Notes under the pieces: model-generated
Seen by the model: only the letters and a program-made list of their open reading frames with translations
The model's database searches: none
Told to the model about the DNA's origin: nothing
Part shown: piece after piece, positions 4,476-33,300 of the stretch
Position numbering within the stretch: the stretch's first letter is position 1
Layout: every line of letters begins with the position of its first letter
Made by a program: the position numbers and the translations under genes
Origin: Macrostomum lignano
Taxonomy: Eukaryota
Assembly (NCBI GenBank): GCA_002269645.1
Contig: NIVC01000280.1
Location: 124,001-188,000, forward strand
Reading direction: 5' to 3'
Length of the DNA: 64,000 bases

Positions 4476-6158
4476 TTACCCGCTGTCACCGTTTGCCAGC
4501 AAACTTTTACTGGCACACGCAGAGCAGAGCTTGTCATCGGTGCGCAGGCAGCCGGCTTCTCTAGTTGGATCGCATCTTCTTCGAGTTGAGGTGCTCCTCA
4601 ACTGACAGCATTTGCTCAACTTTGCACCGCAAAACGTCCAAATGCAACAGAATAAAAGTGTAAATACCAATAAAGCCACAGCGATGATCCCCAGAACATT
4701 TTTGATGGACGGTGTGACGCCTGGCTTTGGCGATGATGCTTCTGTAGGAATTCTGCCTCTGCCAGCCTGTTGGTCAGCTGTTCCACCGAATTCTACTCTT
4801 CTAGTTCCGTTTTCTACTCTTACTTTCTCAGTAGCTGGCTCGGTTGTTGCTACTTTTCTTTTAACTGTAGACAAAGTAATGCTTTTGTTATTATCACCGT
4901 CTTTATACTTAATGCGTTCAGTTACGCCATCGACGCTTTTGTTAAAACCTTCAGAACTTCTTTCCACGCTGCTTACGGTTGTTTGGCCACTTTTACTAAC
5001 TACGTTTGAAGTCGAAGTTTGACCAAGGCTAGCGTTTTTCGTTTGAACGCTGCCGCCTCCGACCATTCGTAATGGCTTTGATTGACCAACAACTCGACTT
5101 ACGGTCTTGAAGTTATTTTTCCCACTGCTGTTGCCTTCCGGAGCTGCACCGCCGCTGATAGAGCCATTGGTGAGGCCGCTGCCGCCTTTCGGAGCTGCAC
5201 CGTCGCTGATCAAGCTCTTGGTGTGACCACTGCCGCCTTTCGGAGCTGCACCGTCGCTGATCAAGCTCTTGGTGTGACCACTGCCGCCTTTCGGAGATGC
5301 ACCGTCGCTGATCGAGCTCTTGGTGTGACCGCTGCCGCCTTTCGGAGCTGCACCGTCGCTGATCAAGCTCTTGGTGTGACCACTGCCGCCTTTCGGAGCT
5401 GCACCGTCGCTGATCAAGCTCTTGGTGTGACCACTGCCGCCTTTCGGAGCTGCACCGTCGCTGATCAAGCTCTTGGTGTGACCACTGCCGCCTTTCGGAG
5501 CTGCACCGTCGCTGATCAAGCTCTTGGTGTGACCACTGCCGCCTTTCGGAGATGCACCGTCGCTGATCGAGCTCTTGGTGTGACCGCTGCCGCCTTTCGG
5601 AGCTGCACCGTCGCTGATCAAGCTCTTGGTGTGACCACTGCCGCCTTTCGGAGCTGCACCGTCGCTGATCAAGCTCTTGGTGTGACCACTGCCGCCTTTC
5701 GGAGATGCACCGTCGCTGATCAAGCTCTTGGTGTGACCGCTGCCGCCTTTCGGAGCTGCACCGTCGCTGATCGAGCTCTTGGTGTGACCACTGCCGCCTT
5801 TTAAAGCTGCACCGTCGCTGATCAAGCTGTTGGTGTGACCACTGCCGCCTTTTGGAGCTGCACCGCCGCTAATCAAGCTCTTGGTGAGCCCGCTTCCGCC
5901 TTTCGGAGCTGCACCGCCGCTAATCAAGCTCTTGGTGAGCCCGCTGCCGCCTTTCGGAGATGCACTGTCGCTGATAGAGGTCGTGCGACTGCTGACGGAG
6001 CTTTCGCTGGCGTGAATTTCTTCGAAAAAATTGCTAGTTTGGCTAACTTTTCTATAGAACAGCCGCTGGTCCTTAGTCGGGCTCGCAGCTTTGTCGTTGA
6101 AAAGTGCGTTCGCTGTTGCTGCGAGAATTGCCAGTAGGAAAAGTTTCCAGGCAATCAT
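4476..6158 (-). CDS. Intronless type I membrane protein with mucin-like Ser/Gly/Thr-rich ectodomain (cluster gene A)
   Basis: Signal peptide MIAWKLFLLAILAATANA from ATG at 6158; about 16 copies of a 51-nt/17-aa repeat (SLISDGAAPKGGSGHTK); TM VLGIIAVALLVFTLLFCCIWTFC; short Cys-rich tail. Confidence 0.8.
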   Translation of the reverse strand: MIAWKLFLLAILAATANALFNDKAASPTKDQRLFYRKVSQTSNFFEEIHASESSVSSRTTSISDSASPKGGSGLTKSLISGGAAPKGGSGLTKSLISGGAAPKGGSGHTNSLISDGAALKGGSGHTKSSISDGAAPKGGSGHTKSLISDGASPKGGSGHTKSLISDGAAPKGGSGHTKSLISDGAAPKGGSGHTKSSISDGASPKGGSGHTKSLISDGAAPKGGSGHTKSLISDGAAPKGGSGHTKSLISDGAAPKGGSGHTKSLISDGAAPKGGSGHTKSSISDGASPKGGSGHTKSLISDGAAPKGGSGHTKSLISDGAAPKGGSGLTNGSISGGAAPEGNSSGKNNFKTVSRVVGQSKPLRMVGGGSVQTKNASLGQTSTSNVVSKSGQTTVSSVERSSEGFNKSVDGVTERIKYKDGDNNKSITLSTVKRKVATTEPATEKVRVENGTRRVEFGGTADQQAGRGRIPTEASSPKPGVTPSIKNVLGIIAVALLVFTLLFCCIWTFCGAKLSKCCQLRSTSTRRRCDPTREAGCLRTDDKLCSACASKSLLANGDSG

Positions 6159-6339
6159 TTTGTCGGTTTCACAAGCTGCTTGAATTATTTTTAATAATTC
6201 GCTCGTATATAGCTGAGAGCTCGTGGGGAGTCTTATATACATCTATTTTGAGAGTCGTATTACAAGGTACGTTTGGTAGTGTACATATTTTTTACTAAAT
6301 TGGTGCTATCCTGTACATTACTGTACAAATCTTGCTTGA

Positions 6340-7696: not shown

Positions 7697-8245
7697 TCAG
7701 CAATCGCTTAGAGAAACTGTCATCTCGGACTCAGTCCAGTCAGGCCCAGCGTCCCGGACTTGTCCTCCACCATAGCTTGGTTCCAGCGGATGTCCAGACC
7801 GCGGGCCGCCGTCTCGCTCTCGACGGCGCGTCAGGCGTCGTTTCTGATAGGCCACAAAAAGTACAGCTCCGGCCATGGCAACGCCCGCCGCCAGAGCGCC
7901 GAGCCCGCCCAGGCCGAGGCGCCGCTGTCCTTCCGCGTTCTTCTTGCTGGCCTCGGCCGCGCACTCCGGGTGCACCAGCTGGAAGGCCCGCCTGTAGAGC
8001 CAGTCCAGCCGGCCAGGAGGTTTTCCGCTGTCCGGTTCAGAGCTCGGACACGGCCTGCACTCGGGCTCGGCTAGGACGGACAGCAGCGACGGCCTGGCCA
8101 GGTAGCTGCCTGGGGGGCAGCCGGACGCTCTGCTCTTGAACAGCCGGGAAGCCCGGATGCTGGCCGATCCGGCCGGACTGAGGCTCAGGTTCAGCAGGAG
8201 CAGCGCGCACAGCACCGACAGTTTCGTTGCCGACGCGCGCTGCAT
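7697..8245 (-). CDS. Intronless type I membrane protein with TNFR/furin-like Cys motif (cluster gene B)
   Basis: Signal peptide; CPPGSYL...ECRPC plus one further Cys; TM LGLGGLGALAAGVAMAGAVLFVAY; basic stop-transfer QKRR; tail contains PLEPSY. Confidence 0.8.
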   Translation of the reverse strand: MQRASATKLSVLCALLLLNLSLSPAGSASIRASRLFKSRASGCPPGSYLARPSLLSVLAEPECRPCPSSEPDSGKPPGRLDWLYRRAFQLVHPECAAEASKKNAEGQRRLGLGGLGALAAGVAMAGAVLFVAYQKRRLTRRRERDGGPRSGHPLEPSYGGGQVRDAGPDWTESEMTVSLSDC

Positions 8246-9235: not shown

Positions 9236-9883
9236 TCAGTTAATTTCTTCATTGTCCACAGTTGAGGCGCCGGCATATGCCGCAATCGGTGTCTCTGCAG
9301 CTGCCAGCGGGTCTTCTTCTCTGGCATCAAATCCGGAATGTTCCTGCAACGCTAATTGCTGCTCCGGTGGAGTCGGTAGCGGCCTGCTCTGCACGGGAGT
9401 GGCGACTGCCTCAGTCATCGGCTGCTGCTCTGGCGTCTGCTCACTACGGGAAGTCGTGCGGAGACGAGTGGAGCTGCCAGTTGACTGCCTGAGCATGGAT
9501 TTTAGCTCGATCTTTTTCACTCGCTTCAAAAGCCAAGCAATCAAAGCGGCAACTCCGGTGAGAACTGCCACGAATGAGCAGACGATGATGACCAGCAACC
9601 AGGTTTCTTCGCTTAAAAAGACGGAGACTGCGCTTGACTCATCCAAAGGTGCTGGCAGTGTTGAAGACTCACGAGATGTGAATCGGTCACCAGGCGCTGG
9701 TGTTGTCATGGTTACGCTGCTCAACGCTGGTGGCTGCGTCAAGACGCACTGGCCAATGTGAGGGTCGAACTTGGTGTTCTCGGGACACACCGGATAAGCG
9801 AAGACGAAGTTCAACAGATGCGTACATAGCAGAGCGAGCAGTCTAGCGAAAATGTTTAACAAGCGCTTCATGTTTACAGCCAT
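9236..9883 (-). CDS. Intronless type I membrane protein with minimal Cys module (cluster gene C)
   Basis: Signal peptide; CPENTKFDPHIGQC; S/T/P stalk; TM WLLVIIVCSFVAVLTGVAALIAWLL; KRVKK; tail with RPLPTPP and AAYAG. Confidence 0.85.
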   Translation of the reverse strand: MAVNMKRLLNIFARLLALLCTHLLNFVFAYPVCPENTKFDPHIGQCVLTQPPALSSVTMTTPAPGDRFTSRESSTLPAPLDESSAVSVFLSEETWLLVIIVCSFVAVLTGVAALIAWLLKRVKKIELKSMLRQSTGSSTRLRTTSRSEQTPEQQPMTEAVATPVQSRPLPTPPEQQLALQEHSGFDAREEDPLAAAETPIAAYAGASTVDNEEIN

Positions 9884-10395: not shown

Positions 10396-10833
10396 ATGCA
10401 CATGCTGGTGCCGGAACGCCAGAGGGCGGCGCTGTTCCAGGCGGTGATCGAGACCGTCCTGTTATACAACGCCGAGACCTGGACGCTGACAGACTCGCTC
10501 GAGGCTCAAGTTGACGCGGCGCACGCTGGCCTGCTGCGCGCCGCCTTCAAGATCGGCAACGAGCGAGTCAACAACACGGCGCTCTATCATCGCGCCGGCC
10601 TGGCCCGTCCTAGCGATCTGCTGCGCCGTCGGCGACTCCAGCTGGCAGGCGCCGAGGCCTACTGTCCGGAGCCGGTGCAGGAGGTGCTGCTACTTACGTT
10701 GCAGGCACCCTACCGGCGGGGACAGGCGAGGACTCGGCGCTACGTCGACTGTCTGCTGGCTGACGCCGGCGCCCCGGACTCTGCCGGCGGTGCGGCCTTT
10801 GTTCGCGCCCAAGCTTCGAAGCGAGCCATCTGA
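10396..10833 (+). mobile_element. Non-LTR retrotransposon fragment (C-terminal part of the RT-containing ORF)
   Basis: LFQAVIETVLLYNAETWTLT...LLRAAF resembles the post-RT LLYGxETW motif of LINE ORF2 proteins; GC-rich island in AT-rich DNA. Confidence 0.75.
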
Positions 10834-11560: not shown

Positions 11561-12311
11561 TCAACTACCCAGTCCCGCGTACTCCGGTCGCACAGGGTCC
11601 CTGACCAGCAGATTGAATGCCTCTGCACCATCTGGCCCATCGTCATGTTGAACGTCCTGAAGGAGCTCTTCCTCAGGGACAGGTGGCAGCGGCCACTTGT
11701 TGATCACTGGGACCAGATTACCACCTGAGAAAGTTTAAAGTTAAGTCTTTAGGAACGAAAGCTCACGAGATCAAACCTGTCGATCCTCATGAACAGAATG
11801 AACTACATGTAAATTCAGTAGTTAGTTACAGACAATACAACAAAACATTAGAGCTCTCACCGAAAGGTTCGGGACTGCCAATGCTGATTTTACCGCTGTC
11901 ACAACCATCATTGTTAATGTTTCCAGACTCAACATCTGTTCTTGACCAGGTGAGCAGCTTGTCCTGACGCTTCTGTCTAACCAAAGTCACCAATCGGTAC
12001 AACAACATTCCGAAAGCCGCCATACCAGCAAGCGCCAGTAGTGCAATTATGCTCGGCGTCAGTCTCTCTGTCGAGGGATTTTGCGACGTACTAATGACGT
12101 GGTTCATTGTCGAGTCTGTGGAAATCTGACCAATCCATCCAGTGGTCAAAGCGTCGAACTTTGGTAGAGGCTGAAGTTGCACGCACATGCTGATGCTGGG
12201 GTCGAAGCGCTGATTGACCGGGCAGTCTGCTGTTCTTGTTGCATCATTCAAAGCCGCAACCATTAGCAATAACAGGGACCAGGTCTCCCATGGTGACTTG
12301 AAAATCAGCAT
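11561..12311 (-). CDS. Two-exon type I membrane protein with minimal Cys module (cluster gene D); exons 11861-12311 and 11561-11724
   Basis: Signal peptide; CPVNQRFDPSISMC; TM IIALLALAGMAAFGMLLY. Phase-1 donor TTCG|gtgaga (11861/11860) matches acceptor tttctcag|GT (11725/11724), adding GGNLVPVINKWPLPPVPEEELL...VRPEYAGLGS-stop. Confidence 0.8.
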
Positions 12312-14339: not shown

Positions 14340-14512
14340 TCGCCACACACACCCTCAGTTACCCCAGCTAATGCTGGCACCCACTTTACAGCTGGGTGAA
14401 CTGAAGCAACGCAGAACTAAGCATCTTGCTCAAGGACACAAATTGTTCCGAGTGGGTCGAGAATCGAACCCCCGACCTTTCAGTCGTGAGTCTGACGCTC
14501 TAACCACTAGGC
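14340..14512 (-). mobile_element. tRNA-derived SINE with a conserved central domain (V/Meta/Nin-like, family uncertain)
   Basis: Minus strand has A box TAGTGGTTAGAGCG and B box GGTTCGATTCT, followed by GTGTCCTTGAGCAAG...TTGCTTCAGTTCACCCAGCTGTAAAGTGGGTGCC; related partial copy at 33744-33802. Confidence 0.75.
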
Positions 14513-14743
14513 AACAATCCCACTAGGCTACAACCCCCACAAGGCTACAACCCCCACAAGGCTACAACCCCCTCTAGGCTACAACCCCCTCTAGGCTACA
14601 ACCCCCTCTTGGCTACAATAGATGGAGGGTTGTAGCCAATAGTCGAGAATGCTTCTAGCATTTTATGATTCATTCAAATATGAATAGATTACCGTGCATA
14701 TTCAACAATCGCAGAGCCAAATCTTCTATAAAAAAGCATGCAT

Positions 14744-15457
14744 TTAAGCTGAGTCATGGGTACTCTCAGGACATGCAGATCTACGAACTGACCCATTTTT
14801 CTGATACACAATCGAATTCATAACTGTGTTCGCTCGCTGCTCGTTTCCATGGTGATTTGCAGGCTGACTCGCTGACGCAAATTCGCGCTCTTCTGTCTGC
14901 TGAGAAGCTGGAGAGTCGGTTCCAGCTGACTGGCCGGCTGCTGCATCGTGTTGGTTGCCATCGCAACTCGGATGTAGAAACGATCTACGCTCTTCATCAC
15001 AAGGCGACGCTGCTACGTCGGTGTTGACATCAGGTGGAACTGAAGCTGATGAGCCCTTTGCGGCCTGCCTTTCTCCCTGCCTGGCTCTGACAAACTTCGT
15101 GTACAGCAGAATGAGAGCCAGGATTTGAACTGTCAGAAGACCAGCAAGCACGAGCGCACCGATGACGATCCAAATGGTTGATTCACCAGCTGCCTGAGCT
15201 GGTGAGCTCGCTGTAGCGTCTGGACGCCACTCGTCAGGGGCGCCTCTCCGCTCGCCTGTCGAGTTGGCAACGCAGCAGACTGGATGGTTGCGACAGGTGC
15301 TCAGGTAGTGCAGGTGGACTTGGATTTCCGGTGAAGGCAGCGGGCAGCGGAGGCACATCTGCTGGCCCGAGTCGAAATACTCGCCAGCCTTTGAGCAGGT
15401 GTTGCCGTAAGCTTGAGCAGCTAGCAGCAATGTGATTAGAACTGACAAGATACTCAT
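14744..15457 (-). CDS. Intronless single-CRD TNFR-like type I membrane protein (cluster gene E)
   Basis: Signal peptide; CSKAGEYFDSGQQMCLRC...CRNHPVCC (6 Cys); TM IWIVIGALVLAGLLTVQILALILLY; ~115-aa tail. Confidence 0.88.
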   Translation of the reverse strand: MSILSVLITLLLAAQAYGNTCSKAGEYFDSGQQMCLRCPLPSPEIQVHLHYLSTCRNHPVCCVANSTGERRGAPDEWRPDATASSPAQAAGESTIWIVIGALVLAGLLTVQILALILLYTKFVRARQGERQAAKGSSASVPPDVNTDVAASPCDEERRSFLHPSCDGNQHDAAAGQSAGTDSPASQQTEEREFASASQPANHHGNEQRANTVMNSIVYQKNGSVRRSACPESTHDSA

Positions 15458-16280
15458 GTTGAAGTCTTGAAAATTTTTTGTAAGGTTAGCTCTGTGAATC
15501 TTTCAAATTTTGTCATACTGGAGCTCAGTAAAATAATGAGTCAGTTCCAGGTACAATGTACAGTAAATGCTTGACTGATAATCTATTTTTACCCATTACC
15601 CGTCTCAACTTCGGTCAGTGACAGTGTTTCAATCTGAGAGCGCTGTGACACAGTTGAGCACACAAGAGAGCTCATTGCTGTGTACTCAGAACTGCACAGT
15701 GCAGAGTACAGTGAGAGAAATTAGCGGTGTATCTCAACGGTAATGGTTGTGTACTGCCCTAACAATGTTTTTAGATTAGCTATTCAGTACATGTACTGGA
15801 CACTTTTTATAGATTATTTTCTTTGTTTATTTTCCTTAAATTTCTACTGTCAGTAGAGTAACAGATAAAAGTTTAGTATAATTTAGACCAGGTGTTTTTG
15901 TTGTACGAAAATGTATCTAGATACGTACATTGTAAGCTTTTTTAATCTTAAAGACTCGTGATTACCTTCAAAAGATTCAAACAAAAAAGGTCGTTAAAAC
16001 GCTCAAGGAAAGTACAGAGGCTTCGGTCTGCCTGGTTCGTCTTATACATGTATTTCAAATTAGGTTAGGGAAATCACCGAGATTGCTGTTGGTTCTGCAG
16101 TGAGTCAAACCGAATTGTAGAAAATCAAGCTTCCGAAAAATGCTCTGAAATTAACCTAACATGAATAACATAAATAACCGATCAGGACAAATAAATTATT
16201 TGGCTTTTTGATTGACAGTGCACAACAGAGAAAAATATGGGAGATTATTTCTTGGATAGTATAGCCAGCTTTAAGCGAGT

Positions 16281-16949
16281 TTAAGATGTGACAGCAAAGG
16301 CAGTCTCGTAGGTACCAGTCGTGTCTTCATCACCATCAGCATAAACGGGTCGGTTCCGATCTTCCAGAGCAGTCTGGAGCAGCTGCAGGCTCGCCTCTCC
16401 ATCTCGGTCTTCAGGAAAGCCGCTGCCTGTCACGGAGCCGGGCGCGCCGCCAGTGATTTCTGCGGCGTTTCCGTCCTCCTCGCCTGTCCTGAAGTCGTGC
16501 GGTAATTCTTGGCTCTTGTGAGAAAACTTCCACACACCGAGCATGATCAAAGCAATGGCCAGGACAGGAGCGGCTGCGCCGAAAACCATCCAACTGGTTG
16601 ACATCCCCTGGGCCTGGAGCGGTGAGCTCAAAGTTGTGGTGCCGCTGCTGCAACTGCTGCTGCTGCTGCTGCTGCTGTGCGGCGGCTTCCAGCTGGGAAC
16701 AGCTGTCGACCCGGATGTTGTGTTGGCAACGCAGCAGACTGGATGGTCGCGACAGGTGCTGAGGTAGTGCAGGTGGATTAGGATTTCCGATGAAGGCAGC
16801 GGGCAGCGGAGGCACATCTGCTGGCCCGGGTCGAAGTACTCGCCAGCCTTTGAGCAGGTGCGGTTGCCAGCTTGTGCGGCGAGCAGCAGTGTGAATAGAA
16901 TTGAAAAGCTGACGGCGGCAGCTTTATTGATTTTGCACATGAAGATCAT
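16281..16949 (-). CDS. Intronless single-CRD TNFR-like type I membrane protein (cluster gene F); ectodomain like E/G, tail like H
   Basis: Likely start at ATG 16949 or 16940; signal peptide; CSKAGEYFDPGQQMCLRC...CRDHPVCC; poly-Ser stalk; TM WMVFGAAAPVLAIALIMLGVW; tail FSHKSQELPH...NRPVYADG. Confidence 0.85.
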   Translation of the reverse strand: MIFMCKINKAAAVSFSILFTLLLAAQAGNRTCSKAGEYFDPGQQMCLRCPLPSSEILIHLHYLSTCRDHPVCCVANTTSGSTAVPSWKPPHSSSSSSSSCSSGTTTLSSPLQAQGMSTSWMVFGAAAPVLAIALIMLGVWKFSHKSQELPHDFRTGEEDGNAAEITGGAPGSVTGSGFPEDRDGEASLQLLQTALEDRNRPVYADGDEDTTGTYETAFAVTS

Positions 16950-17298
16950 CGTTTTTGAGTTGTCTGAAGATTTTATTAAGCACTTGACAAGTTTAATGTC
17001 TGCTTTTAAAGGTTTATCTAGACTAAGACAAGTAAAATTTAGTTCCAAGTCCAAAAAGGTTTTTCCGCGGAAAAACCGTATGGTTGCACGTACATTTATT
17101 TCTATTTATAGAGAATTCGTCACTTAGGGGCTTTCAGACAGAGATAGGCAGAGCCACTCACTGTGTGTTGAGCGAGATGGAGCGCCATTGTGTCAAGGAC
17201 TACTTAAGTATTTATTCTGATATTTGTACAAGGCTGTTACGCAAAAAATGGTTGAATTCAATCAGTTTTATACAATCGCAGTTTGTAAATTTTTAAGA

Positions 17299-18650
17299 TC
17301 AATTTTCAGCATTTTCAACAGAGCTGAGACGCTCATAGCCAGCATCTGAGGAGCTGTCGATTACCTCCTGAGGCTCAGGGGCGGCAGTTGTTGCGGCTCG
17401 AGGCTGCCGATTGCAGCGCCAGACCATCACCACCAGCAGCCCCAGGAGAAGGACCACCGCTGACCAAGAAGCGACCAGCAAAACCATCAATGCAAACTGA
17501 GTGTCAGTCCTGTCAGTCTCACCGGTTGACAGCGTAGATGGCGTCCCGCTGGGGTTCGAACTGGCGGACCGCAGTTCTGCCCTGGTCGCTCCGTCGGGGC
17601 ATCGGACGCAGAGGTTCTGGCCGGGGTCGTAGCAGCGGCCTGTGGGGCGGGGAGAGGCGGGGGTCGCTAAAGAAATTCTGAAGTCAATTTTGCAGTGGCG
17701 AATGGCGCGGCCCGGGAACTTTATGGGGAATATCGGGAGGGAGTGGTGAATATTGAGGATGGGGGATATCGGGGATGGGGGATATCGGGGATGGGATATC
17801 GGGGATGGGGGATATCGGGGATGGGATATCGGGGATGGGGGATATCGGGGATGGGGAAAATCGGGGATGAGGAAAATCGGGATGGGGATATCGGGGATGG
17901 GGGATATCGGGGATGGGGGATATCGGGGATGGGATATCGGGGATAGGGGATATCGGGGATGGGATATCGGGGATGGGGGATATCGGGGATGGGGGAATCG
18001 GGGATGGGTAAAATCGGGGATGGGGGATATCGGGGATGGGATATCGGGGATGGGGGATATGAAAGTATTGGGAATATCAGGGGATGGAAATATCGGGGAT
18101 GGAGAGTATCAGGGATGGGAAAAATCGGGGATGGGGGATATCGGGGATGGGGGATATCGGGGATGGGATATCGGGGATGGGGGATATCGGGAATGGGGGA
18201 TTTCGGGGATGGGGGATATCGGGGATGGGGGATATCGGGGATGGGATTTCGGGGATGGGGGATATCAGGGATGGGAATTAAATAAAAAGGGAGTTATCGG
18301 AGATTGGGAATAACTGGGGATGGTGAATATTGGGGGGATGGGGTTTCTTGGAACACTGCTCGAGCTTAGTTAATGTTGACTAGATTATTAGTAAAAAACA
18401 TTTTTTACAACTTTCCAAAGCAATGGAGCAATGGAAAATTTCTATAAATTAGCTCGTAGTGTTGCAATACATATGAATATTTGCGTCACTTTTAATTTTA
18501 GAAACAACACACGTGTGCACATAAGAAAGGGAATAACGTCAAATAGCTTGAAATAAAATTTTATCTGCTTGAAAAAAATTAAAAGAAAAAATATTTCGAA
18601 ATGCTTGACTCACCTGGCCGCCCGGAGCAGACAGCAGACTCAGACAGCAT
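17299..18650 (-). CDS. Predicted two-exon, signal-peptide-less single-CRD membrane protein (cluster gene I); exons 18614-18650 and 17299-17639, ~125 aa
   Basis: ATG...CCAG|gtgagt (phase 1) joins the pyrimidine-rich acceptor cgcctctccccgccccacag|GC, giving MLSESAVCSGRPGRCYDPGQNLCVRC...TM(LMVLLVASWSAVVLLLGLLVVMVW)...PQEVID...YERL. An alternative in-frame acceptor lies at 17666. Confidence 0.7.
17750..18330. repeat. G-rich satellite (GGGGATATCG variants) inside the predicted intron of gene I
   Basis: Tandem imperfect units. Confidence 0.95.
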
Positions 18651-18691
18651 AGCGACAGACAGCTTGCAGCTGAATTCCCAGCGCGCCCAGG

Positions 18692-18697
18692 TTTATA
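18692..18697 (-). promoter_or_regulatory. Candidate TATA box (TATAAA) for gene I
   Basis: TATAAA on the minus strand ~42 nt upstream of ATG 18650. Confidence 0.45.
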
Positions 18698-19144
18698 AGC
18701 TTTTGAGGCCAAGTCAGAGATAAGATAGCAAACATGGAGTTTAGTTGGGTGTAATATTTTTAGAGGAAATATATAATTTTTGGTCAAAGTTAGCGATCAA
18801 TAAATTAATTTATTAAAAATAAATATACTCAGCAACATTGAAAAGTCGCCACTCTATGCGCCACCAGTTAGCGATTTCTCTTGGACTGTTCTGAAATCAA
18901 AGATACGAGAAAACTGATCGGGGTAGCTTTAATCTGTAGCGTTAACCCTCGCACACCGCACCCCCCACTTCATTCCTCAACTCAAGTCTGCCCAGGCGTA
19001 GCTAATTTGCGTCACTCGCAAAGATTGAGAGACTTCACCTGCACTCACTCTCAATCTTCTGTGATGGCGACTTTTCGATGTTGCTGAATATACGAGTATT
19101 TGACGTTAGACAAGTGGTCTCTAGGCTGAATATCAAAAAAGCTG

Positions 19145-20135
19145 TTAGTTGATGACGGCAGGCTTGTGACGATGGCAGCTACTCGCATGGATTTGTAGGC
19201 TGGCTGGTCTGCGTGACTCTTTGCTGAGATTCCGCAGATTCCGCAGATTCCGCATGTTCCGCAGATTCCGCATGTTCCGCAGATTCCGCAGATTCCGCAG
19301 ATTCCGCAGATTCCGCATGTTCCGCAGATTCCGCATGTTCCGCAGATTCCGCAGATTCCGCAGATTCCGCAGATTCCGCAGATTCCGCATGTTCCGCAGA
19401 TTCCGCAGATTCCGCAGATTCCGCAGATTCCGCATGTTCCGCAGATTCCGCAGATTCCGCAGATTCCGCAGATTCCGCATGTTCCGCAGATTCCGCAGAT
19501 TCCGCAGATTCCGCAGATTCCGCAGATTCCGCAGATTCCGCAGATTCCGCATGTTCCGCAGATTCCGCAGATTCCGCATGTTCCGCAGATTCCGCAGATT
19601 CCGCATGTTCCGCAGATTCCGCAGATTCCGCATGTTCCGCAGATTCCGCATGTTCCGCAGATTCCGCAGATTCCGCAGATTCCGCATGTTCCGCAGATTC
19701 CGCAGATTCCGCAGATTCCGCATGTTCCGCAGATTCCGCATGTTCCGCAGATTCCGCAGATTCCGCAGATTCCGCATGTTCCGCAGATTCCGCAGATTCC
19801 GCAGATTCCGCATGTTCCGCAGATTCCGCATGTTCCGCAGATTCCGCAGATTCCGCAGATTCCGCATGTTCCGCAGATTCCGCAGATTCCGCAGATTCCG
19901 CATGTTCCGCAGATTCCGCAGATTCCGCAGATTCCGCAGATTCCGCATGTTCCGCAGATTCCGCAGATTCCGCAGATTCCGCAGATTCCGCATGTTCCGC
20001 AGGCACCGCAGGCAGTTTACCAGAGGTCGAGGCTGGTTAGCATTGAATAGTTGAATATCATCACCCTGCTGTCCTTGATCTTCCTTCTCTTGACGCCTGT
20101 TAGATCGCGTTGAACGACGCTTGCAATAGCAAACG
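19145..20135 (-). pseudogene. 5'-truncated, frameshifted paralog of gene H with an expanded 9-bp (SAE/HAE) repeat
   Basis: CYCKRRSTRSNRRQ matches H. CGACC-TCTGGT versus CGACCGTCTGGT in H is a 1-nt deletion near 20025. About 86 units of GCAGAATCT/GCGGAACAT type. No signal peptide, CRD or TM. Confidence 0.85.
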
Positions 20136-20214
20136 TGCATACCGTTTAACGGTTACAGATTACCGTGCATATTCAACAATCGCAGAGCCAAATCTTCTAT
20201 AAAAAAGCATGCAT

Positions 20215-20928
20215 TTAAGCTGAGTCATAGGTACTCTCAGGATATGCAGATCTACGAACTGACCCATTTTTCTGATACACAATCGAATTCATAACTGTGT
20301 TCGCTCGCTGCTCGTTTCCATGGTGATTTACAGGCTGACTCGCTGACGCAAATTCGCGCTCTCCTGTCTGCTGAGAAGCTGGAGAGTCGGTTCCAGCTGA
20401 TTGGCCGGCTGCTGCATCGTGTTGGTTGCCATCGTAACTCGTATGTAGAAACGATCTACGCTCTTCATCACAAGGCGACGCTGCTTCGTCGGTGTTGACA
20501 TCAGGTGGGACAGAAGCTGATGAGCCCTTTGCGGCCTGCCTTTCTCCCTGCCTGGCTCTGACAAACTTCGTGTACAGCAGAATGAGAGCCAGGATTTGAA
20601 CTGTCAGAAGACCAGCAAGCACGAGCGCACCGATGACGATCCAAATGGTTGATTCATCGGCTGCCTGAGCTGGTGAGCTCACTTTAGCGTCTGGACGCCA
20701 CTCGTCAGGGGCGCCTCTCGGCTTGCCTGTCGAGTTGGCAACGCAGCAGACTGGATGGTCGCGACAGGTGCTCAGGTAGTGCATGTGGACTTGGATTTCC
20801 GGTGAAGGCAGCGGGCAGCGGAGGCACATCTGCTGGCCCGAGTCGAAGTACTCGCCAGCCTTTGAGCAGGTGTTGCCGTAAGCTTGAACAGCTAGCAGCA
20901 AAGTGAATGGAATTGACAAGATGCTCAT
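20215..20928 (-). CDS. Intronless single-CRD TNFR-like type I membrane protein (cluster gene G), recent duplicate of gene E
   Basis: Same length as E with 25 nt differences in 714 nt (manual count); flanks are also duplicated. Confidence 0.88.
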   Translation of the reverse strand: MSILSIPFTLLLAVQAYGNTCSKAGEYFDSGQQMCLRCPLPSPEIQVHMHYLSTCRDHPVCCVANSTGKPRGAPDEWRPDAKVSSPAQAADESTIWIVIGALVLAGLLTVQILALILLYTKFVRARQGERQAAKGSSASVPPDVNTDEAASPCDEERRSFLHTSYDGNQHDAAAGQSAGTDSPASQQTGEREFASASQPVNHHGNEQRANTVMNSIVYQKNGSVRRSAYPESTYDSA

Positions 20929-21376
20929 GTTGAAGGTCTTGATGACTTTTAATAACAATTTCTGTAAGGTTAGGTCTGTGACTTTTTCAACTTTTCAGAG
21001 CTCAGAAATATAATGAGTCAGTTCCAGGTTCAATTTACAGTGAATGCTTCACTTAGAATCTATTTATATCCATTACTCGTCTCAACACTGGTCAGCGGTA
21101 GTGCTCAATCTGAGAGCACTGTGGTACACTTGAATACTCAGAGAGCTCATTGCTGTGTACTCAGGACTGCACATTGCAGAGTACAGTGAGGGCAATTAGC
21201 GGTGTACCTCAACGGTAACTGTTGTGTAGTGATTTGATAATACATTTATTATCTATTAATTATTAATAATTTATTAGTACTTTTTGCGTATTTTCCTTTC
21301 GTTTTTTCCATATGCGGTTGACGTGCTGATGAAATTTGGAGGCTTGGCAAGGCTGCACTGAGGCACAGTGCTGATT

Positions 21377-21503
21377 GGCGCACAGGGGTGTACTGAATAC
21401 ACTAGCGCTTATGTGGAAAATCCGACCTTCTGGCAGAATCGTTGAATATCTCGACGGTCCTGAGGACTGGCGACTTGATTCCTGTTTGAGAAGGTGCGCA
21501 ACA
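21377..21503. mobile_element. Dispersed repeat; inverted copy at ~31628-31757
   Basis: caggggtgtactgaatacact...gttgaatatctcgacggtcc...gaaggtgcgcaac is the reverse complement of 31628-31757. Absent from the paralogous flank at 15760-16000. Confidence 0.7.
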
Positions 21504-22112
21504 AAAAGTTAGCCCGTCTTCTTGAATTTCGTGTGCCTGTGTTGCTCCGTTCCGGCGCAGCAAAAAAATTGTCAGGGGGTCCCCCTTTTGGTAGTTTGAC
21601 GGGAGGAAAAATGGCTCGCATTGCAAAGCCGCGCCCACACCATTGCAGAGCAGTTTACAATTCAGAAGTTCAGGAGGCGAGAAATTGGGAATTTAGTTCT
21701 AAAAATTATGAAATCTCCCCAATAAATTTCGCAACGCAACGATTTTTTTCAGTCCACCATGAGTAATCGTACGAGTATGGCTTATGCATTCGAACTGGTT
21801 TAGTTTAAGTTTAAAGAAAGTACAGAGGCTTCTGTCTGCCAGGTTCGTCTTATACATGTATTTCAAATTAGGTTAGGGAAATCACCGAGATTGCTGTTGG
21901 TTTTGCAATAAATCAAACCGAATTGTAAAAAAAATCAAGCTTTATCTGACTGAAAAATGCTCTGAAATGAACATAACATGAATAACCGATCAGGACAAAT
22001 TATTTGGCTTTTTGATTGAAAGTGCATAACAAAGAAAAATATGGGAGATTATTGCTTGGATAATACAGTCAACTTTAAGCGAAGTTAGGTGTGACGCCTA
22101 AGGCACAGACTC

Positions 22113-22961
22113 TTAGGTACCAGTCGCAGCCGTGCCTTCATCACCATCAGCATAAGCGGGTCGGTCCCGGTTTTCCAGAGCAGTCGAAAGAAGCTGCAGT
22201 CTCGCCTCTCCGTCTCGGCCTTCAGGAGAGCCGCTGCCAGTCACCGAGCCGGGCGCACCAGTGATCTCTGCGGCGTTTCCATCCTCCTCGCCTGTGGCGT
22301 TTCCGACCTCCGCGCCTGTCCTGAAGCCGTGCGGTAATTCTTGGCTCTTGTGAGAAAACCTTGTGACTCCTTGCTGAGATTCCGCAGATTCCGCAGATTC
22401 CGCAGATTCCGCAGATTCCGCAGATTCCGCAGATTCCGCAGATTTCGCAGATTCCGCAGATTCCGCAGATTCCGCAGGCACCGCAGGCAGTTTACCAGAC
22501 GGTCGAGGCTGGTCAGCTTTGAGTAGTTTAGTATTATCACCCTGCTGTTCTTGATCTTCCAGCTCTTGACGCCTGTTAGATCGCGTTGAACGACGCTTGC
22601 AATAGCAAACGATGGCAATGATGGCGAAAGAAGCCAAAATCAGCACAACAGGTATCACAATTGGTAGGACAATCGCAAGATTAGGAGAAGACGACAAATT
22701 CGAATCGGACTCAGTAGAAACAGACACCGTAGACGCAGCTTCAGTTGATGATGCCGCCCGCTGGGTAGTCAGGCCGTCTCCGCACTCTCCCAAGTCAATC
22801 TCAGCCTGAGTGCAGTGGACGCACCTGTTCTGGCCCGGGTCCCATCGCATGCCCGGCTGGCACACGCTGACTTCGGCGACGGCCATCAGTGACAGCGGCA
22901 ACAGCTGCAGCAGAAGCAGACAGTGGCCAGCTGGCATTCCGCACTTATCGAATCTCAGCAT
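22113..22961 (-). CDS. Intronless single-CRD TNFR-like type I membrane protein with cytoplasmic (SAE)10 repeat (cluster gene H)
   Basis: Likely start ATG 22961 or 22937; signal peptide; CQPGMRWDPGQNRCVHC...GEC; TM LAIVLPIVIPVVLILASFAIIAIVCYC; KRR; tail ends DRPAYADG. Confidence 0.88.
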   Translation of the reverse strand: MLRFDKCGMPAGHCLLLLQLLPLSLMAVAEVSVCQPGMRWDPGQNRCVHCTQAEIDLGECGDGLTTQRAASSTEAASTVSVSTESDSNLSSSPNLAIVLPIVIPVVLILASFAIIAIVCYCKRRSTRSNRRQELEDQEQQGDNTKLLKADQPRPSGKLPAVPAESAESAESAKSAESAESAESAESAESAESAESQQGVTRFSHKSQELPHGFRTGAEVGNATGEEDGNAAEITGAPGSVTGSGSPEGRDGEARLQLLSTALENRDRPAYADGDEGTAATGT

Positions 22962-30300: not shown

Positions 30301-33300
30301 GCGGGCGGCGGGCTGGGCCGTCAGCTCCCAGAAGGCCACCCGGCCGTCGGTGGTGGCCAGAGCCAGCCGGGTCTCGAGCAGCGGGTCCAGGCACACATCA
30401 GCCAGCCCGCAGTGCCGGGTCACCTGCGGCAGGGGCGGGGATGAGCTGCTCAGTGAATGAATGAGTGAGTGAGTGAGTGAGTGAGTGAGTGAGTGAGTGA
30501 GTGAGTGAGTGAGTGAGTGAGTGAGTGAGTGAGTGAGTGAGTGAGTGAGTGAGTGAGTGAGTGAGTGAGTGAGTGAGTGAGTGAGTGAGTGAGTGATTTT
30601 TAAGAATTTTCTAATTGAGAAGTTTATGAAATTAAAGAAAAAAGGTAACGAGATGAGAAGGGACCGCAAAGGGATCATGAAGGGACCGCAAAGGGATCAT
30701 GAAGGGACCGCAAAGGGATCATGAAGGGACCGCAAAGGGATCATGAAAAGCCGGTCGCCAGCGCCCCTGCACACCTTGAACGAGTCAGTCTGAGCCACGC
30801 AGTCGAACTCGTCGCAGCCGGGCCGGCGCAGGCGCAGGCTGACGGCGCCGGTCTCCTGCAGGCAGGCCAGCAGGTCCCGGTGGGCGCAGCTGTGCACCCG
30901 AAGGAAGCCGGCGGCGCTGCGCTCCAAGGCGATGGACGCCACCGGCTGGTTGATGAGCAGATCGATCAGGACAATCTCCCGACTGTACACGGCGATCACG
31001 TGATTGCGGCGGGCTCTGTGATAGGTCACCTGACAGGAATAGCAAGTGAGGGGCGCTGCCGTGACATTCCCTAAACTTCACGCATTCAAATCCCTCATTT
31101 TAAATTTTATGAGCTCTAAACTGCTAAAATCCCATCGCTGCGAACAAACGAACGACGAAGGACACTGAGTAAAAGGTAAAAATTGTGATGGATAGAGCGG
31201 GGGTCGAACCCGCGACCACCAGATTATAAATCTGGCGCTCTACCAACTGCGCTACCTGCCCAGTTATTTTTCGTCATTTTAATACTATTTAACTGTAGAA
31301 AAGAAGGAAGTCGGAATTTCCAACTAGGAGGTCGGAATTTCCAACTAGGAGGTCGGAATTTCCAACTAGGAACTCGGAATTTCCAACTAGGAGGAAGACG
31401 GAATTTCCAACCAGGAGGTCGGAATTTCCGAAACTCTTCCTTCCACAGTTAAATAGTATTAAAGCGACGAAAAACATGAAGGGCGGATAGCTTGAGCAGT
31501 TGGTAGAGCGCCAGCTTTAAGATCTGGAGGTCGCGGGTTCGAGCCCCGCTCTGTCCATCATATTTTTACTTGATTAACAGTAGAGCTATACCAAGGTGCA
31601 CGCTGCAATTCAAGAACACGGACTTATTGGCTGTTGCGCACCTTCTCAAGCAAGAATTAAGTCGTCAGTCCTCCGGACCGTCGAGATATTCAACGATTCT
31701 ACCAGAAGGTCGGATTTTTCCCATAAGCGCCAGTGTATTCAGTACACCCCTGTGGGCCATACTGAGGGCGCCATACTGAGGGCGCCATACTGAGGGCGCC
31801 ATACTGAGGGCGCCATACTGAGGGCGCCATACTGAGGGCGCCATACTGAGGGCGCCATACTGAGGGCGCCATATAGTAAAAAAACACACCTGCAAGCAGG
31901 GTTGCTGCTCAAAGCTCTGAGCATCCTTGCCGGGATGAGCCTGATGACCCCCCTGCTGTTGCTGCTGCTGGCTGCCGCCGCCAGGAGACACCAGGCCGGC
32001 GGTCATGTGCAGCAGCCGCATCGCCTGGCTGCGTTCCCGCTCCGAATAGGTGGACACCGAGCGGGGAATGCCGCCCGAGCCGGTCGTCGACGAGGTGGAC
32101 GTCGGGCCGTGCAGATTGAGCCGCTTGGCGTCGCCTGAGGGCTCTCTGGCGGGGGCGGAGATCGGAGCAAAGATGAAGAATTGAAGGATGCGAGTTTTAT
32201 AATGAAGCGATATTGACACTTGCTTCTCTGTCGGGTTCATAAGATGTGACAGACTACCGATCCAAAACCCAAACCCAAACCCAAACCAAAAACCCAAACT
32301 CAAACCAAAACCCAAATCCAAACCCAAAACCCAAACCCAAAACCCAAACCCAAAACCCAAACCCAAACCCAAACCCAAACCCAAACCCAAAACCCAAACC
32401 CAAACCCAAAACCCAAACCCAAACCCAAACCCAAACCCAAACCCAAAACCCAAACCCAAACCCAAAACCCAAACCCAAACCCAAAACCCAAACCCAAACC
32501 CAAAACCCAAACCCAAACCCAAAACTCAAACCCAAAACCCAAACCCAAACCCAAAACCCAAACCCAAACCCAAACTCAAACTCAAACCCAAACCCAAACC
32601 CAAAACCCAAACCCCAAACCCCAACCCAAAACCCTAACCCAAATCCAAATCCAAACCCAAATTCAAACCCAAAACCAAACCCAAACCCAAACCCAAAACC
32701 CAAAACCCAAACCCAAACCCAAAACCCAAACTCAAACTCAAACCCAAACCCAACACTGCAGCTCAAACTGCCATCGAACCAGCCGCATCTCCCAGCGCAC
32801 CTGTCAGGCGTCAAGTCGCTGAAGAAGAGCACGCAGGTCGGGTCGGACCTCAGGAACACCAGGCAGTGGCCCCGATCGAACGGGTCGAGGCAGAGACTGC
32901 CGCCGCCAAACACAGAGTCTGGGACGGCGCCCGATGTTGCCACGGAGCGGCGCCACAGCAGCGCGCCGGTGTCGGAGTTCCACAGCGCCAGCTCGCCGCC
33001 GGCCGCCGAACCAGCCGACGCCGTCGCCGAACCCGATGATCCGGCCGAGTTGGCCGACGAAGCCCCCGACGCCGCCGCCGCGGCCGCTGCCGCCGAAGAC
33101 GCCGGCAGCAGGAGGCCCAGCAGGAGCTCCGGGCTCGGCCAATCCGCATCGGCCAGACTGTGGCGGCCGGACAGCCCGGCCGGCGCCTGCATTTCGGCCG
33201 ACACCCGGCCGTCCAGAGCGTCCCAAGCCAGCAGACGGCCGTTGACGTGCCCGACGGCCAGGCGGGCCGACCAGCGACCGGGCGGTGGCGGCGCCCAGCG

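What the first reader, a model, noticed from the sequence alone, without database searches (positions are those of the whole stretch)
16281..22961. Ectodomain/tail module shuffling between paralogs F, E/G, H and the 19-kb remnant
Seen: F has the E/G-type ectodomain (CSKAGEYFD...HPVCCVAN) but a different stalk and TM. From gttttctcacaagagcc (FSHKSQELPH) onward, F's tail and 3' flank (16000-16530) match those of H (21810-22370). H shares its juxtamembrane and SAE region with the 19-kb remnant up to GAGTCAC, then switches to the F-type tail at a direct repeat TCACAAG...TCACAAG. The cluster therefore holds combinations of two or more sensing modules and three tails. Inference: unequal crossover or gene conversion at microhomologies rewires recognition to signalling, as seen in paired immune receptors.
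Basis: seen in the sequence. Interest (0 to 1): 0.75.

Follow-up and report, generated by a model that had tools for sequence, protein, structure and literature searches.

The report
Shuffled receptor-like gene cluster in flatworm
A tandem cluster of small, flatworm-specific membrane-receptor-like genes (Macrostomum lignano) has swapped outer and inner protein parts through duplication, gene fusion and copy-correction between neighbours; this is a clear but ordinary case of how gene families evolve, and its function is still unknown.

Summary
F shares about 196 bp (signal peptide plus Cys-rich ectodomain) with E/G at 88-89% identity, while its stalk and TM are saturated at synonymous sites (dS 1.2 against 0.16). 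F's tail and 3' flank match H's. H shares its juxtamembrane and SAE repeat with the 19-kb remnant up to GAGTCAC.

The DNA is Macrostomum lignano, a neopolyploid flatworm. Two other long-read contigs of the same cluster carry both chimeric junctions base for base, so the junctions are not local assembly artefacts.

The layout (H-5' | F-type tail-flank-gene | truncated H copy-X-F | tail-flank-gene) fits best a tandem duplication running from inside H to the end of E. An in-frame deletion then fused H to an F tail. Gene conversion followed, giving mosaic copies that differ between subgenomes (PHI p=0.0005).

The junctions look non-homologous. One has a 21-nt filler. The TCACAAG repeat is no better than chance (about 6%).

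The proteins are lineage-restricted type I membrane proteins. Their ectodomain resembles BCMA/BAFF-R-type TNF-receptor hairpins, suggestively but not significantly.

The "paired immune receptor" reading is not supported: no ITIM or ITAM, no charged TM residue, and no functional data.

The parts
14744..15457 (-). Gene E (237 aa). Signal peptide, 6-Cys ectodomain (CSKAGEYFDSGQQMCLRC...CCVAN), TM, and a 115-aa E/G-type tail.
   Evidence: ORF. 95% identical to the M. lignano protein BOX15_Mlig007536g1.
14686..15756 (-). Position-2 copy of the duplicated E/G unit (block gamma).
   Evidence: 92% identical to 20157-21231. 97.9% identical to the position-1 unit of L001 and L002.
16005..16527 (-). F-type cytoplasmic tail (from FSHKSQELPH) plus its 3' flank. 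Homologous to H's tail and flank.
   Evidence: Tail dS 0.19, dN 0.065 between the F and H versions.
16281..16949 (-). Gene F (222 aa from MIFMCK). E/G-like ectodomain, its own stalk and TM, and an F/H-type tail.
   Evidence: The orthologue P0003 is annotated from transcripts in L001.
16716..16911 (-). Conversion-like tract covering the end of F's signal peptide and its Cys-rich domain, shared with E and G.
   Evidence: 88.4-88.8% identity. dS 0.16 here against 1.2 in the adjacent stalk/TM. No homology upstream.
16528..16715 (-). F stalk (poly-Ser from a TGC/AGC repeat) and TM. An old, diverged homologue of the E/G stalk and TM.
17299..18650 (-). Predicted two-exon gene X (134 aa). Exon 1 is 18614-18650 and exon 2 is 17299-17666. 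The intron holds a 16-bp minisatellite (17750-18275). Motif CYDPGQNLCVRC, then TM and a short tail.
   Evidence: Translations. GT/AG splice sites read. Conserved in L001 and L002 at 96.5-98.8%. Not annotated anywhere.
19145..20135 (-). 5'-truncated copy of the ancestral H gene (the 'remnant'). It holds the juxtamembrane (20003-20135), the SAE 9/18-bp minisatellite (19227-20002, 86 units) and the original short 3' end (...QQRVTQTSQPTNPCE*). It has a 1-bp deletion found only in this copy.
   Evidence: L001 and L002 have 17 units and no frameshift.
20136..20156 (-). Junction 2: a 21-nt filler (GTAACCGTTAAACGGTATGCA on the gene strand, containing a 6-bp-arm palindrome) between the 3' end of the G unit and the start of the remnant.
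   Evidence: Identical in the window, L001 and L002.
20215..20928 (-). Gene G (237 aa), a paralogue of E.
   Evidence: E against G: 5' flank 84.1%, CDS 96.5%, 3' flank 100%.
20157..21231 (-). Position-1 copy of the duplicated E/G unit (part of block alpha).
   Evidence: 98.5% identical to the position-2 unit of L001.
21232..21812 (-). H-G spacer, absent between F and E. It contains a 153-bp repeat also found at 31607-31759.
21813..22359 (-). H's F-type tail and 3' flank, including a 24-bp tandem duplication at 22268-22319.
22347..22369 (-). Junction 1: GAGTCAC|AAG|GTTTTCTCACAAG. The remnant-type sequence ends at 22363 and the F-type sequence starts at 22359. Three bases (22360-22362) are of ambiguous origin. 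The reading frame is preserved.
   Evidence: Identical in the window, L001 (8333) and L002 (8332).
22113..22961 (-). Gene H (282 aa), a chimera. It has its own ectodomain (CQPGMRWDPGQNRCVHC) and TM (22612-22961), juxtamembrane (22478-22611), SAE repeat (22377-22477) and an F-type tail.
   Evidence: Intact in the window and L002. L001 has a 1-bp insertion that truncates it.

Best explanation
The region is part of a tandem cluster of small single-pass membrane-protein genes specific to Macrostomum. Each has a short Cys-rich ectodomain built around C-x4-6-[FWY]-D-[PS]-x4-C-x2-C. The layout today, in gene direction, is: H(5' part + JM + SAE) | F-type tail-flank-G | remnant(JM + SAE + original end)-X-F(5' part) | F tail-flank-E.

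The simplest history (inferred) has three steps:
1. The ancestral order was H0-X-F-E.
2. A non-homologous tandem duplication copied the segment from H0's juxtamembrane to just past E. This created junction 2 and its 21-nt filler.
3. A deletion in the first copy ran from the end of H0's SAE repeat to the start of F's tail. This created junction 1, and by chance or selection it was in frame. It yielded the chimeric gene H, and left the second copy of H0 as a headless remnant.

A one-step template-switching event would give the same product.

Since then, homology-dependent gene conversion or unequal exchange has kept shuffling the roughly 2-kb duplicated blocks and the coding parts. Three signs of this:
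- The F ectodomain was homogenised with E/G.
- The E and G coding regions are far more alike than their promoters.
- The three haplovariants carry different mosaics of the two block types.

Shown here: the homologies, the junctions and their reproducibility, and the discordant divergence. Inferred: the order of events and the mechanism at the junctions. Unknown: the ligand, the signalling and the biological role.
For: Organism and copies:
- E is 95% identical to an M. lignano protein.
- Contigs NIVC01001652.1 (L001) and NIVC01000276.1 (L002/L003) hold the same cluster beside WDR11.
- M. lignano has three subgenomes about 2% apart (PMC10733133).

Homology map.

Both junctions are identical in all three copies.

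The duplicated parts have similar divergence, as expected from one event:
- JM 92.5-93.5%.
- Tail and flank 90-91%.
- 5' flank of the E/G unit 84%.

Conversion signals:
- dS for F against E is 0.16 in the ectodomain tract (6 of 41 synonymous sites) and 1.2 in the stalk/TM (24 of 40), Fisher p=2.8e-5.
- E against G is 96.5% in the CDS and 84.1% in the 5' flank, with dN/dS about 0.8. Constraint therefore does not explain the similarity.
- The six units give PHI p=0.0005, with 679 of 3240 incompatible site pairs and visibly block-wise variable sites.
- The window's position-1 block (22359-20157) is 98.6% identical to L001's position-2 block, where it follows F. The window's E is 97.9% identical to the position-1 genes of L001 and L002.

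Coding integrity:
- H is in frame across the fusion in the window and in L002.
- Tail dN/dS is 0.34 between the F and H versions, binomial p=0.028.
- E-type and F-type genes are in a transcriptome-based annotation that drops repeat-overlapping transcripts, which explains why H is missing from it.
Against: - No unduplicated outgroup arrangement is available, so the polarity of the events is inferred.
- Thirty-six percent of the Mlig_3_7 assembly length lies in subgenome-chimeric scaffolds. The apparent swap of block types between positions in L001 and the window could therefore be partly an assembly effect, although it would need two misjoins within about 2.5 kb.
- The PHI test on the tail and flank alone is not significant (p=0.06).
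- L002's 'mosaic' F tail rests on one SNP plus one slippage-prone 24-bp duplication.
- dN/dS near 1 in E/G copies and a frameshifted H in L001 leave open that some members are drifting or dead.
Confidence: 0.78

Rival explanations
1. The chimeric junctions and mosaics are assembly artefacts from merging homeologous subgenomes or collapsing the tandem repeats.
For: M. lignano is neopolyploid. Thirty-six percent of the Mlig_3_7 assembly length is in chimeric scaffolds. The region is packed with minisatellites. Block types appear swapped between positions in the window and L001.
Against: Junctions 1 and 2, the filler and the F ectodomain tract are base-for-base the same in three separately assembled copies that differ by 2-5% elsewhere. 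A subgenome chimera joins homologous positions and would not create an SAE-to-tail fusion.
Confidence: 0.05
2. There has been no recombination after the duplications. The high similarity of the F and E/G ectodomains, and of the E and G coding regions, simply reflects strong purifying selection on a ligand-binding domain.
For: The Cys-rich core CSKAGEYFD...MCLRCPLPS is almost invariant across nine copies.
Against: Synonymous sites show the same contrast: dS 0.16 against 1.2, p=2.8e-5. The tract includes part of the signal peptide. Whole-gene dN/dS among E/G copies is 0.7-1.2. The 58-bp non-coding 3' flank of E and G is 100% identical while the 5' flank is 84%. The PHI test is significant.
Confidence: 0.07
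3. This is a functional paired-receptor system. The same sensing domain is wired to opposing signalling tails (F against E/G), and different sensing domains are wired to the same tail (F and H), maintained by selection as in KIR, Ly49 or FCGR2.
For: The modular combinations exist. The fusion is in frame. The tail shows mild constraint, omega 0.34. There is a TGEE motif (TRAF2-type consensus) in the F/H tail and PQEVID (TRAF6-type) in X. M. lignano has about 10 TNF ligands.
Against: There is no ITIM, ITAM or ITSM and no charged TM residue. The short motifs are low-specificity. dN/dS is about 1 in E/G. H is truncated in L001. There is no expression or binding data for H. Nothing links the family to immunity.
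Confidence: 0.1

Closest known systems
Hybrid receptor genes made by unequal exchange in tandem families, such as human FCGR2C (FCGR2B-like ectodomain with an FCGR2A-like tail), the glycophorin GYPA/B/E hybrids and KIR recombinants (from established knowledge).
   Same: Tandem paralogues. Sharp switch points between ectodomain and tail modules. In-frame chimeras. Ongoing interlocus gene conversion. Haplotypes with different mosaics.
   Different: Here the founding junctions are non-homologous (a 21-nt filler in one, no usable microhomology in the other) rather than NAHR within long homology. The genes are intronless in the swapped part, so the switch is inside an exon. No function or disease or immune link is known.
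Single-CRD TNF receptors of the BCMA / TACI / BAFF-R type (TNFRSF17, 13B, 13C).
   Same: Very small single-pass receptors. The N-terminal hairpin motif is C-x4-6-[FYW]-[FW]D-x4-C-x2-C. AF2 predicts a hairpin followed by two helices, as in BCMA. The top PDB profile hit is BAFF-R. The top 14 Foldseek hits are BCMA or BR3. hhalign probability is 66% over 19 columns. UniRef labels the orthologues 'TNFR-Cys domain-containing'.
   Different: None of those matches is statistically significant, and there is no Pfam hit. The ligand-contacting Leu of the DxL motif is absent (DSGQ or DPGQ). The second half of the E/G/F domain has a different Cys spacing. E, F, G and H have signal peptides. The family is found only in M. 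lignano among 1.84 billion representative proteins.
The canonical platyhelminth TNFR (NGFR-like, 4 CRDs plus a death domain; PMC7519573).
   Same: Same phylum. M. lignano has that receptor and also TNF ligands.
   Different: That survey reports a single TNFR per flatworm species (one species-specific duplication aside). The genes here are much smaller, lack a death domain and are invisible to the Pfam TNFR model.

Membership tests
TNF receptor superfamily (BCMA/TACI/BAFF-R-like single CRD) | A1-type module: C-x(10-14)-C-x2-C with a conserved aromatic residue in a beta-hairpin. | tested here: met
   E/G/F have C-x13-C-x2-C with EYFD. H has C-x12-C-x2-C with RWD. X has C-x7-C-x2-C, the same as the inner BAFF-R spacing. 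AF2 predicts a hairpin at EYFD/MCLR.
TNF receptor superfamily (BCMA/TACI/BAFF-R-like single CRD) | Significant match to a curated TNFR, BCMA, TACI or BAFF-R sequence model. | tested here: not met
   Pfam gives no hit at E<=10 for the full proteins or for the ectodomains alone. The PDB profile search has BAFF-R as best hit, but at E=6.2.
TNF receptor superfamily (BCMA/TACI/BAFF-R-like single CRD) | Fold similarity to solved TNFR CRDs. | tested here: inconclusive
   The model has pLDDT 65. The Foldseek top 14 hits are all BCMA or BR3, but with E 0.66-3.4, probability <=0.2 and TM 0.35-0.54.
TNF receptor superfamily (BCMA/TACI/BAFF-R-like single CRD) | DxL ligand-binding motif at the hairpin tip. 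| tested here: not met
   The Asp is invariant, but the Leu position holds G, H or S (FDSGQQ, WDPGQN, FDPHIG, FDPSIS).
TNF receptor superfamily (BCMA/TACI/BAFF-R-like single CRD) | Binds a TNF-family ligand and recruits TRAFs. | not testable with these tools
   Only low-specificity motif matches were found: TGEE in the F/H tail and PQEVID in X.
Paired activating/inhibitory immune receptors | Near-identical ectodomains on neighbouring genes with different cytoplasmic tails. | tested here: met
   F and E/G have 88-89% DNA identity in the ectodomain and unrelated tails.
Paired activating/inhibitory immune receptors | An ITIM or ITSM in the inhibitory partner. | tested here: not met
   A regular-expression scan of the E, G, F, H and X tails found none.
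Paired activating/inhibitory immune receptors | An activating partner with a short tail and a charged TM residue (adaptor coupling), or an ITAM. | tested here: not met
   There is no K, R, D, E or H in any of the four TM segments, and no ITAM.
Chimeric genes from segmental duplication plus interlocus gene conversion (process) | Sharp homology boundaries and discordant divergence between adjacent segments. | tested here: met
   Fisher p=2.8e-5 and PHI p=0.0005.
Chimeric genes from segmental duplication plus interlocus gene conversion (process) | Junctions reproducible in independent assemblies or haplotypes. | tested here: met
   Junction 1 and junction 2 are identical in the window, L001 and L002.
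   The TCACAAG repeat flanks the breakpoint but does not contain it. Three bases are ambiguous at junction 1 and there is a 21-nt filler at junction 2. The chance rate of such a repeat is about 6%. A third TCACAAG lies 51 bp into the remnant's original 3' end (19163-19169), which allows a serial template-switch model but does not prove it.

The most novel reading that the evidence does not exclude
Macrostomum lignano carries a hidden, fast-evolving cluster of mini TNF receptors of the BCMA/BAFF-R type. At least eight linked genes in this window would belong to it, and they are invisible to Pfam. This would contradict the published view that flatworms have a single NGFR-like TNFR. Recombination between the cluster's ectodomain and tail modules would diversify how the species' expanded set of about ten TNF ligands is coupled to intracellular signalling.
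Probability: 0.15. Interest if true: 0.65.

Novelty: new member of a known kind. Interest (0 to 1): 0.4.

Why it matters
The cluster is a compact example of how new receptor architectures arise without introns, and every step can be read from the sequence. A duplication with breakpoints inside genes is followed by an in-frame deletion, which welds one gene's ectodomain to another's tail. Gene conversion then spreads the modules among neighbours and among the subgenomes of a young polyploid.

If the weak BCMA/BAFF-R resemblance holds, the TNF receptor repertoire of flatworms would need revising. It would also supply candidate partners for the orphan TNF ligands of free-living flatworms.

Without functional data this remains a well-documented case of an already known evolutionary process.

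Tried and rejected
- Pfam on the full proteins and on the ectodomains gave nothing usable. There were only sub-threshold TM and low-complexity hits for H.
- phmmer of the E ectodomain against PDB gave no hit.
- Word-indexed homology searches with E, H and X found only three M. lignano proteins, and nothing for X. The X query carried one extra Gly through my error; this is unlikely to matter.
- An exhaustive HMMER search of 1.84 billion representatives found only P0001 and P0003, plus one low-complexity hit.
- Exact-protein look-ups of the window's E, F, G and H found no record, so neither the window's source contig nor RNA-seq contigs could be retrieved.
- The AF2 model of the first 125 residues was poor (pLDDT 60) and was not used for the fold search.
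- The Rfam scan gave only repeat-driven hits below the gathering threshold (tsr1, isrG) inside the SAE minisatellite. I rejected these as spurious.
- A literature search for the locus tags found nothing.
- A simple crossover at TCACAAG was considered and rejected, because the predicted product differs from the observed junction.
- A single NAHR event between the position-1 and position-2 blocks was considered to explain the swap between the window and L001. I rejected it because it would delete or duplicate remnant-X-F, which all three copies keep once.

Full report
**What is there.** All genes in 14.6-23.2 kb lie on the minus strand. In gene direction they are:
- H (22961-22113).
- G (20928-20215).
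- A headless gene fragment, the 'remnant' (20135-19145).
- X, a predicted two-exon gene (18650-18614 and 17666-17299, with a minisatellite in its intron).
- F (16949-16281).
- E (15457-14744).

Each intact protein has a signal peptide (X has none), a short Cys-rich ectodomain, a Ser/Thr-rich stalk, one TM helix and a cytoplasmic tail. Three further small genes of the same design lie at 7697-8245, 9236-9883 and 11826-12311. The shared motif is C-x4-6-[FWY]-D-[PS]-x4-C, usually followed by x2-C.

**Organism and context.** E is 95% identical to the Macrostomum lignano protein BOX15_Mlig007536g1, which UniRef names 'TNFR-Cys domain-containing'. Two contigs of assembly GCA_002269645.1 carry the same cluster next to WDR11: NIVC01001652.1 (L001) and NIVC01000276.1 (L002/L003). 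Their unique flanks are 95-98% identical to the window. M. lignano is a neopolyploid with three subgenomes (S, L1, L2) about 2% apart (PMC10733133). The window, L001 and L002 are therefore best read as three haplovariants of one locus. The assembly is PacBio-based. Its GenBank annotation comes from a genome-guided transcriptome from which transcripts overlapping repeats were removed (PMC5730564). So the E-type and F-type genes are transcribed, and the absence of the repeat-containing H from the annotation says nothing about its expression.

**Check of the observation.** The boundaries are sharp:
- The F and E/G similarity (88-89%) starts 38 nt after F's ATG, inside the signal peptide, and ends directly after the codons for CCVAN. 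Upstream there is no similarity. Downstream (stalk and TM) the genes are still alignable but very diverged.
- F and H become alignable exactly at GTTTTCTCACAAGAGCC and stay so through the stop codon and about 280 bp of 3' flank.
- H and the remnant agree from CGTTTGCTATTGC (…CYCKRR) through the SAE repeat to GAGTCAC. The remnant then continues into a short original ending (QQRVTQTSQPTNPCE*), while H continues into the F-type tail, in frame.

**Is it recombination or just selection?** Between F and E, synonymous divergence is 0.16 in the ectodomain tract (6 differences at 41 sites). It is 1.2 in the adjacent stalk and TM (24 at 40 sites), Fisher p=2.8e-5. Between E and G, the coding region is 96.5% identical and the 58-bp 3' flank 100%, but the 5' flank only 84.1%. 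Whole-gene dN/dS is about 0.8. So homogenisation, not constraint, explains the similarity.

**History inferred from the layout.** Write a = H ectodomain and TM; b = JM plus SAE; c = original H end, X and the F head; d = F tail, flank and the E unit. The window then reads a b d' b' c d.

The two copies of b are 92.5-93.5% identical. The two copies of d are about 90% identical in the tail and flank (84% in the 5' flank of the E/G unit). This is compatible with one duplication. The simplest path has two steps:
- A non-homologous tandem duplication of b-c-d created junction 2, which carries a 21-nt filler containing a small palindrome.
- A deletion of c from the first copy created junction 1. This fused the old H to an F tail and left the second b as a remnant.

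A one-step replicative template switch would give the same product. Both junctions, including the filler, are identical in the window, L001 and L002. They therefore predate the split of the three haplovariants and are not local misassemblies.

**The microhomology claim.** H does contain TCACAAG twice, 13 bp apart, and the remnant's original 3' end has a third copy 51 bp downstream of GAGTCAC. But a crossover within the repeat would give GAGTCACAAGAGCC, not the observed GAGTCACAAGGTTTTCTCACAAGAGCC. The actual switch lies in a 3-base window with no clear microhomology. About 6% of random 20-bp neighbourhoods in non-satellite parts of this window hold such a 7-mer repeat. I regard the repeat as compatible with serial template switching, but not as evidence for it.

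**Continuing exchange.** Aligning the six E/G-type units from the three haplovariants shows block-wise mosaics, with a significant PHI test (p=0.0005; 679 of 3240 site pairs incompatible). The window carries what look like the two 'pure' block types:
- alpha at position 1: H-type tail, flank, 581-bp spacer and G.
- gamma at position 2: F-type tail, flank, 248-bp spacer and E.

L001 and L002 carry a recombinant at position 1: H-type tail, flank and 504 bp of spacer, then an F-type spacer and an E-type gene that is 97.9% identical to the window's E. L001 carries an alpha block at position 2. Its F gene therefore has an H-type tail 97.6% identical to H's, and this block is 98.6% identical to window 22359-20157. 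L002 carries a third mosaic at position 2.

Three caveats apply:
- The PHI test on the tails alone is not significant (p=0.06).
- The H-like start of L002's F tail rests on one SNP plus a slippage-prone 24-bp duplication.
- Thirty-six percent of this assembly's length is in subgenome-chimeric scaffolds, so the position swap needs confirmation from long reads.

**Are the genes alive?**
- All six E/G copies keep open frames of 234-237 codons, but with dN/dS of 0.7-1.2.
- The F/H tail shows mild constraint between its two versions (dN/dS 0.34, binomial p=0.028).
- H is intact in the window and in L002, but has a 1-bp insertion in L001.
- The remnant has no signal peptide or TM. In the window it has an extra frameshift, and its SAE minisatellite has grown to 86 units against 17 in L001 and L002.

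**What kind of proteins?** The family is restricted to M. lignano in every search. Pfam finds nothing. Several weak and independent leads point to the BCMA/TACI/BAFF-R type of TNF-receptor hairpin:
- The UniRef rule-based name.
- The best PDB profile hit, BAFF-R (E=6.2).
- An AF2 model (pLDDT 65) with a hairpin followed by two helices.
- Foldseek, whose top 14 hits are all BCMA or BR3, though at E 0.66-3.4.
- hhalign, with probability 66% over the 19-residue hairpin.

The ligand-contacting Leu of the DxL motif is missing. I therefore call the resemblance suggestive but unproven. A survey of flatworm TNF signalling reported a single NGFR-like TNFR per species (one species-specific duplication aside) and about ten TNF ligands in M. 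lignano (PMC7519573). If these genes are real mini-TNFRs, they were missed there.

**The paired-receptor analogy.** The one feature that holds is similar ectodomains on different tails. There is no ITIM, ITAM or ITSM, no charged TM residue, and no Ig or lectin domain. The TGEE motif in the F/H tail and PQEVID in X match loose TRAF-binding consensus patterns and are only leads.

**Verdict.** The inference of recombination-driven module shuffling is right in substance, wrong in its mechanistic detail (microhomology crossover), and unsupported in its functional analogy. This is a new and well-resolved example of a known evolutionary process, in an unannotated, lineage-specific, possibly TNFR-like gene family.

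Noticed in passing
window 19227-20002 vs L001/L002 10930-11082: The SAE-coding 9/18-bp minisatellite in the remnant has 86 units in the window but 17 in the two other haplovariants. H's own array is about 11 units in all three. All three frames of the gene strand stay open through the window's array.
   Followed up: partly
window 7697-8245, 9236-9883, 11826-12311 (minus strand): Three more small type I membrane-protein genes with the same N-terminal motif (CPPGSY...ECRPC; CPENTKFDPHIGQC; CPVNQRFDPSISMC). The cluster therefore extends well beyond the finding. Two of them have annotated counterparts in L002/L003.
   Followed up: partly
window 4476-6242 (minus strand): A 588-aa ORF for a mucin-like type I membrane protein. 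It has about 16 copies of a 17-aa repeat (GGSGHTKSLISDGAAPK), encoded by a 51-bp minisatellite.
   Followed up: no
window 21376-21528 and 31607-31759; tRNAs at 31187-31262 and 31485-31557: A 153-bp sequence in the H-G spacer recurs inverted (89% identity) next to a tRNA-Ile(TAT)/tRNA-Leu(TAA) pair. It may be a small mobile element. The 504-581-bp spacer that carries it is present or absent in different copies of the duplicated block.
   Followed up: no
window 14371-14618: A tRNA-like sequence (SINE-like; not called a tRNA by ARAGORN), followed by a 17-bp minisatellite directly downstream of E. It marks the end of the duplicated unit's neighbourhood.
   Followed up: no
window 10396-10833 (plus strand): An ORF with a reverse-transcriptase-like C-terminal motif (...VLLYNAETWTL...), probably a fragment of a non-LTR retrotransposon between cluster genes.
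   Followed up: no
window 32265-32753: A long (AAACCC)n-like array of about 78 units. It is telomere-repeat-like in form but interstitial.
   Followed up: no
L001 10001-10769 (P0001) vs window 14686-14760: The annotated orthologue of E uses a 67-nt 3' intron that gives an alternative C-terminus (…NGRFGSAIVEAAR). Its stop codon (TAA in GGTAAT) lies at the end of the E/G duplicated unit, so the duplication boundary sits right at the end of that spliced coding sequence.
   Followed up: partly
L001 about 8125 (H juxtamembrane): A 1-bp insertion (GATCTTAAC against GATCTAAC) truncates H after ...KRRSTRS in this haplovariant. It is either a real null allele or a PacBio indel error.
   Followed up: no
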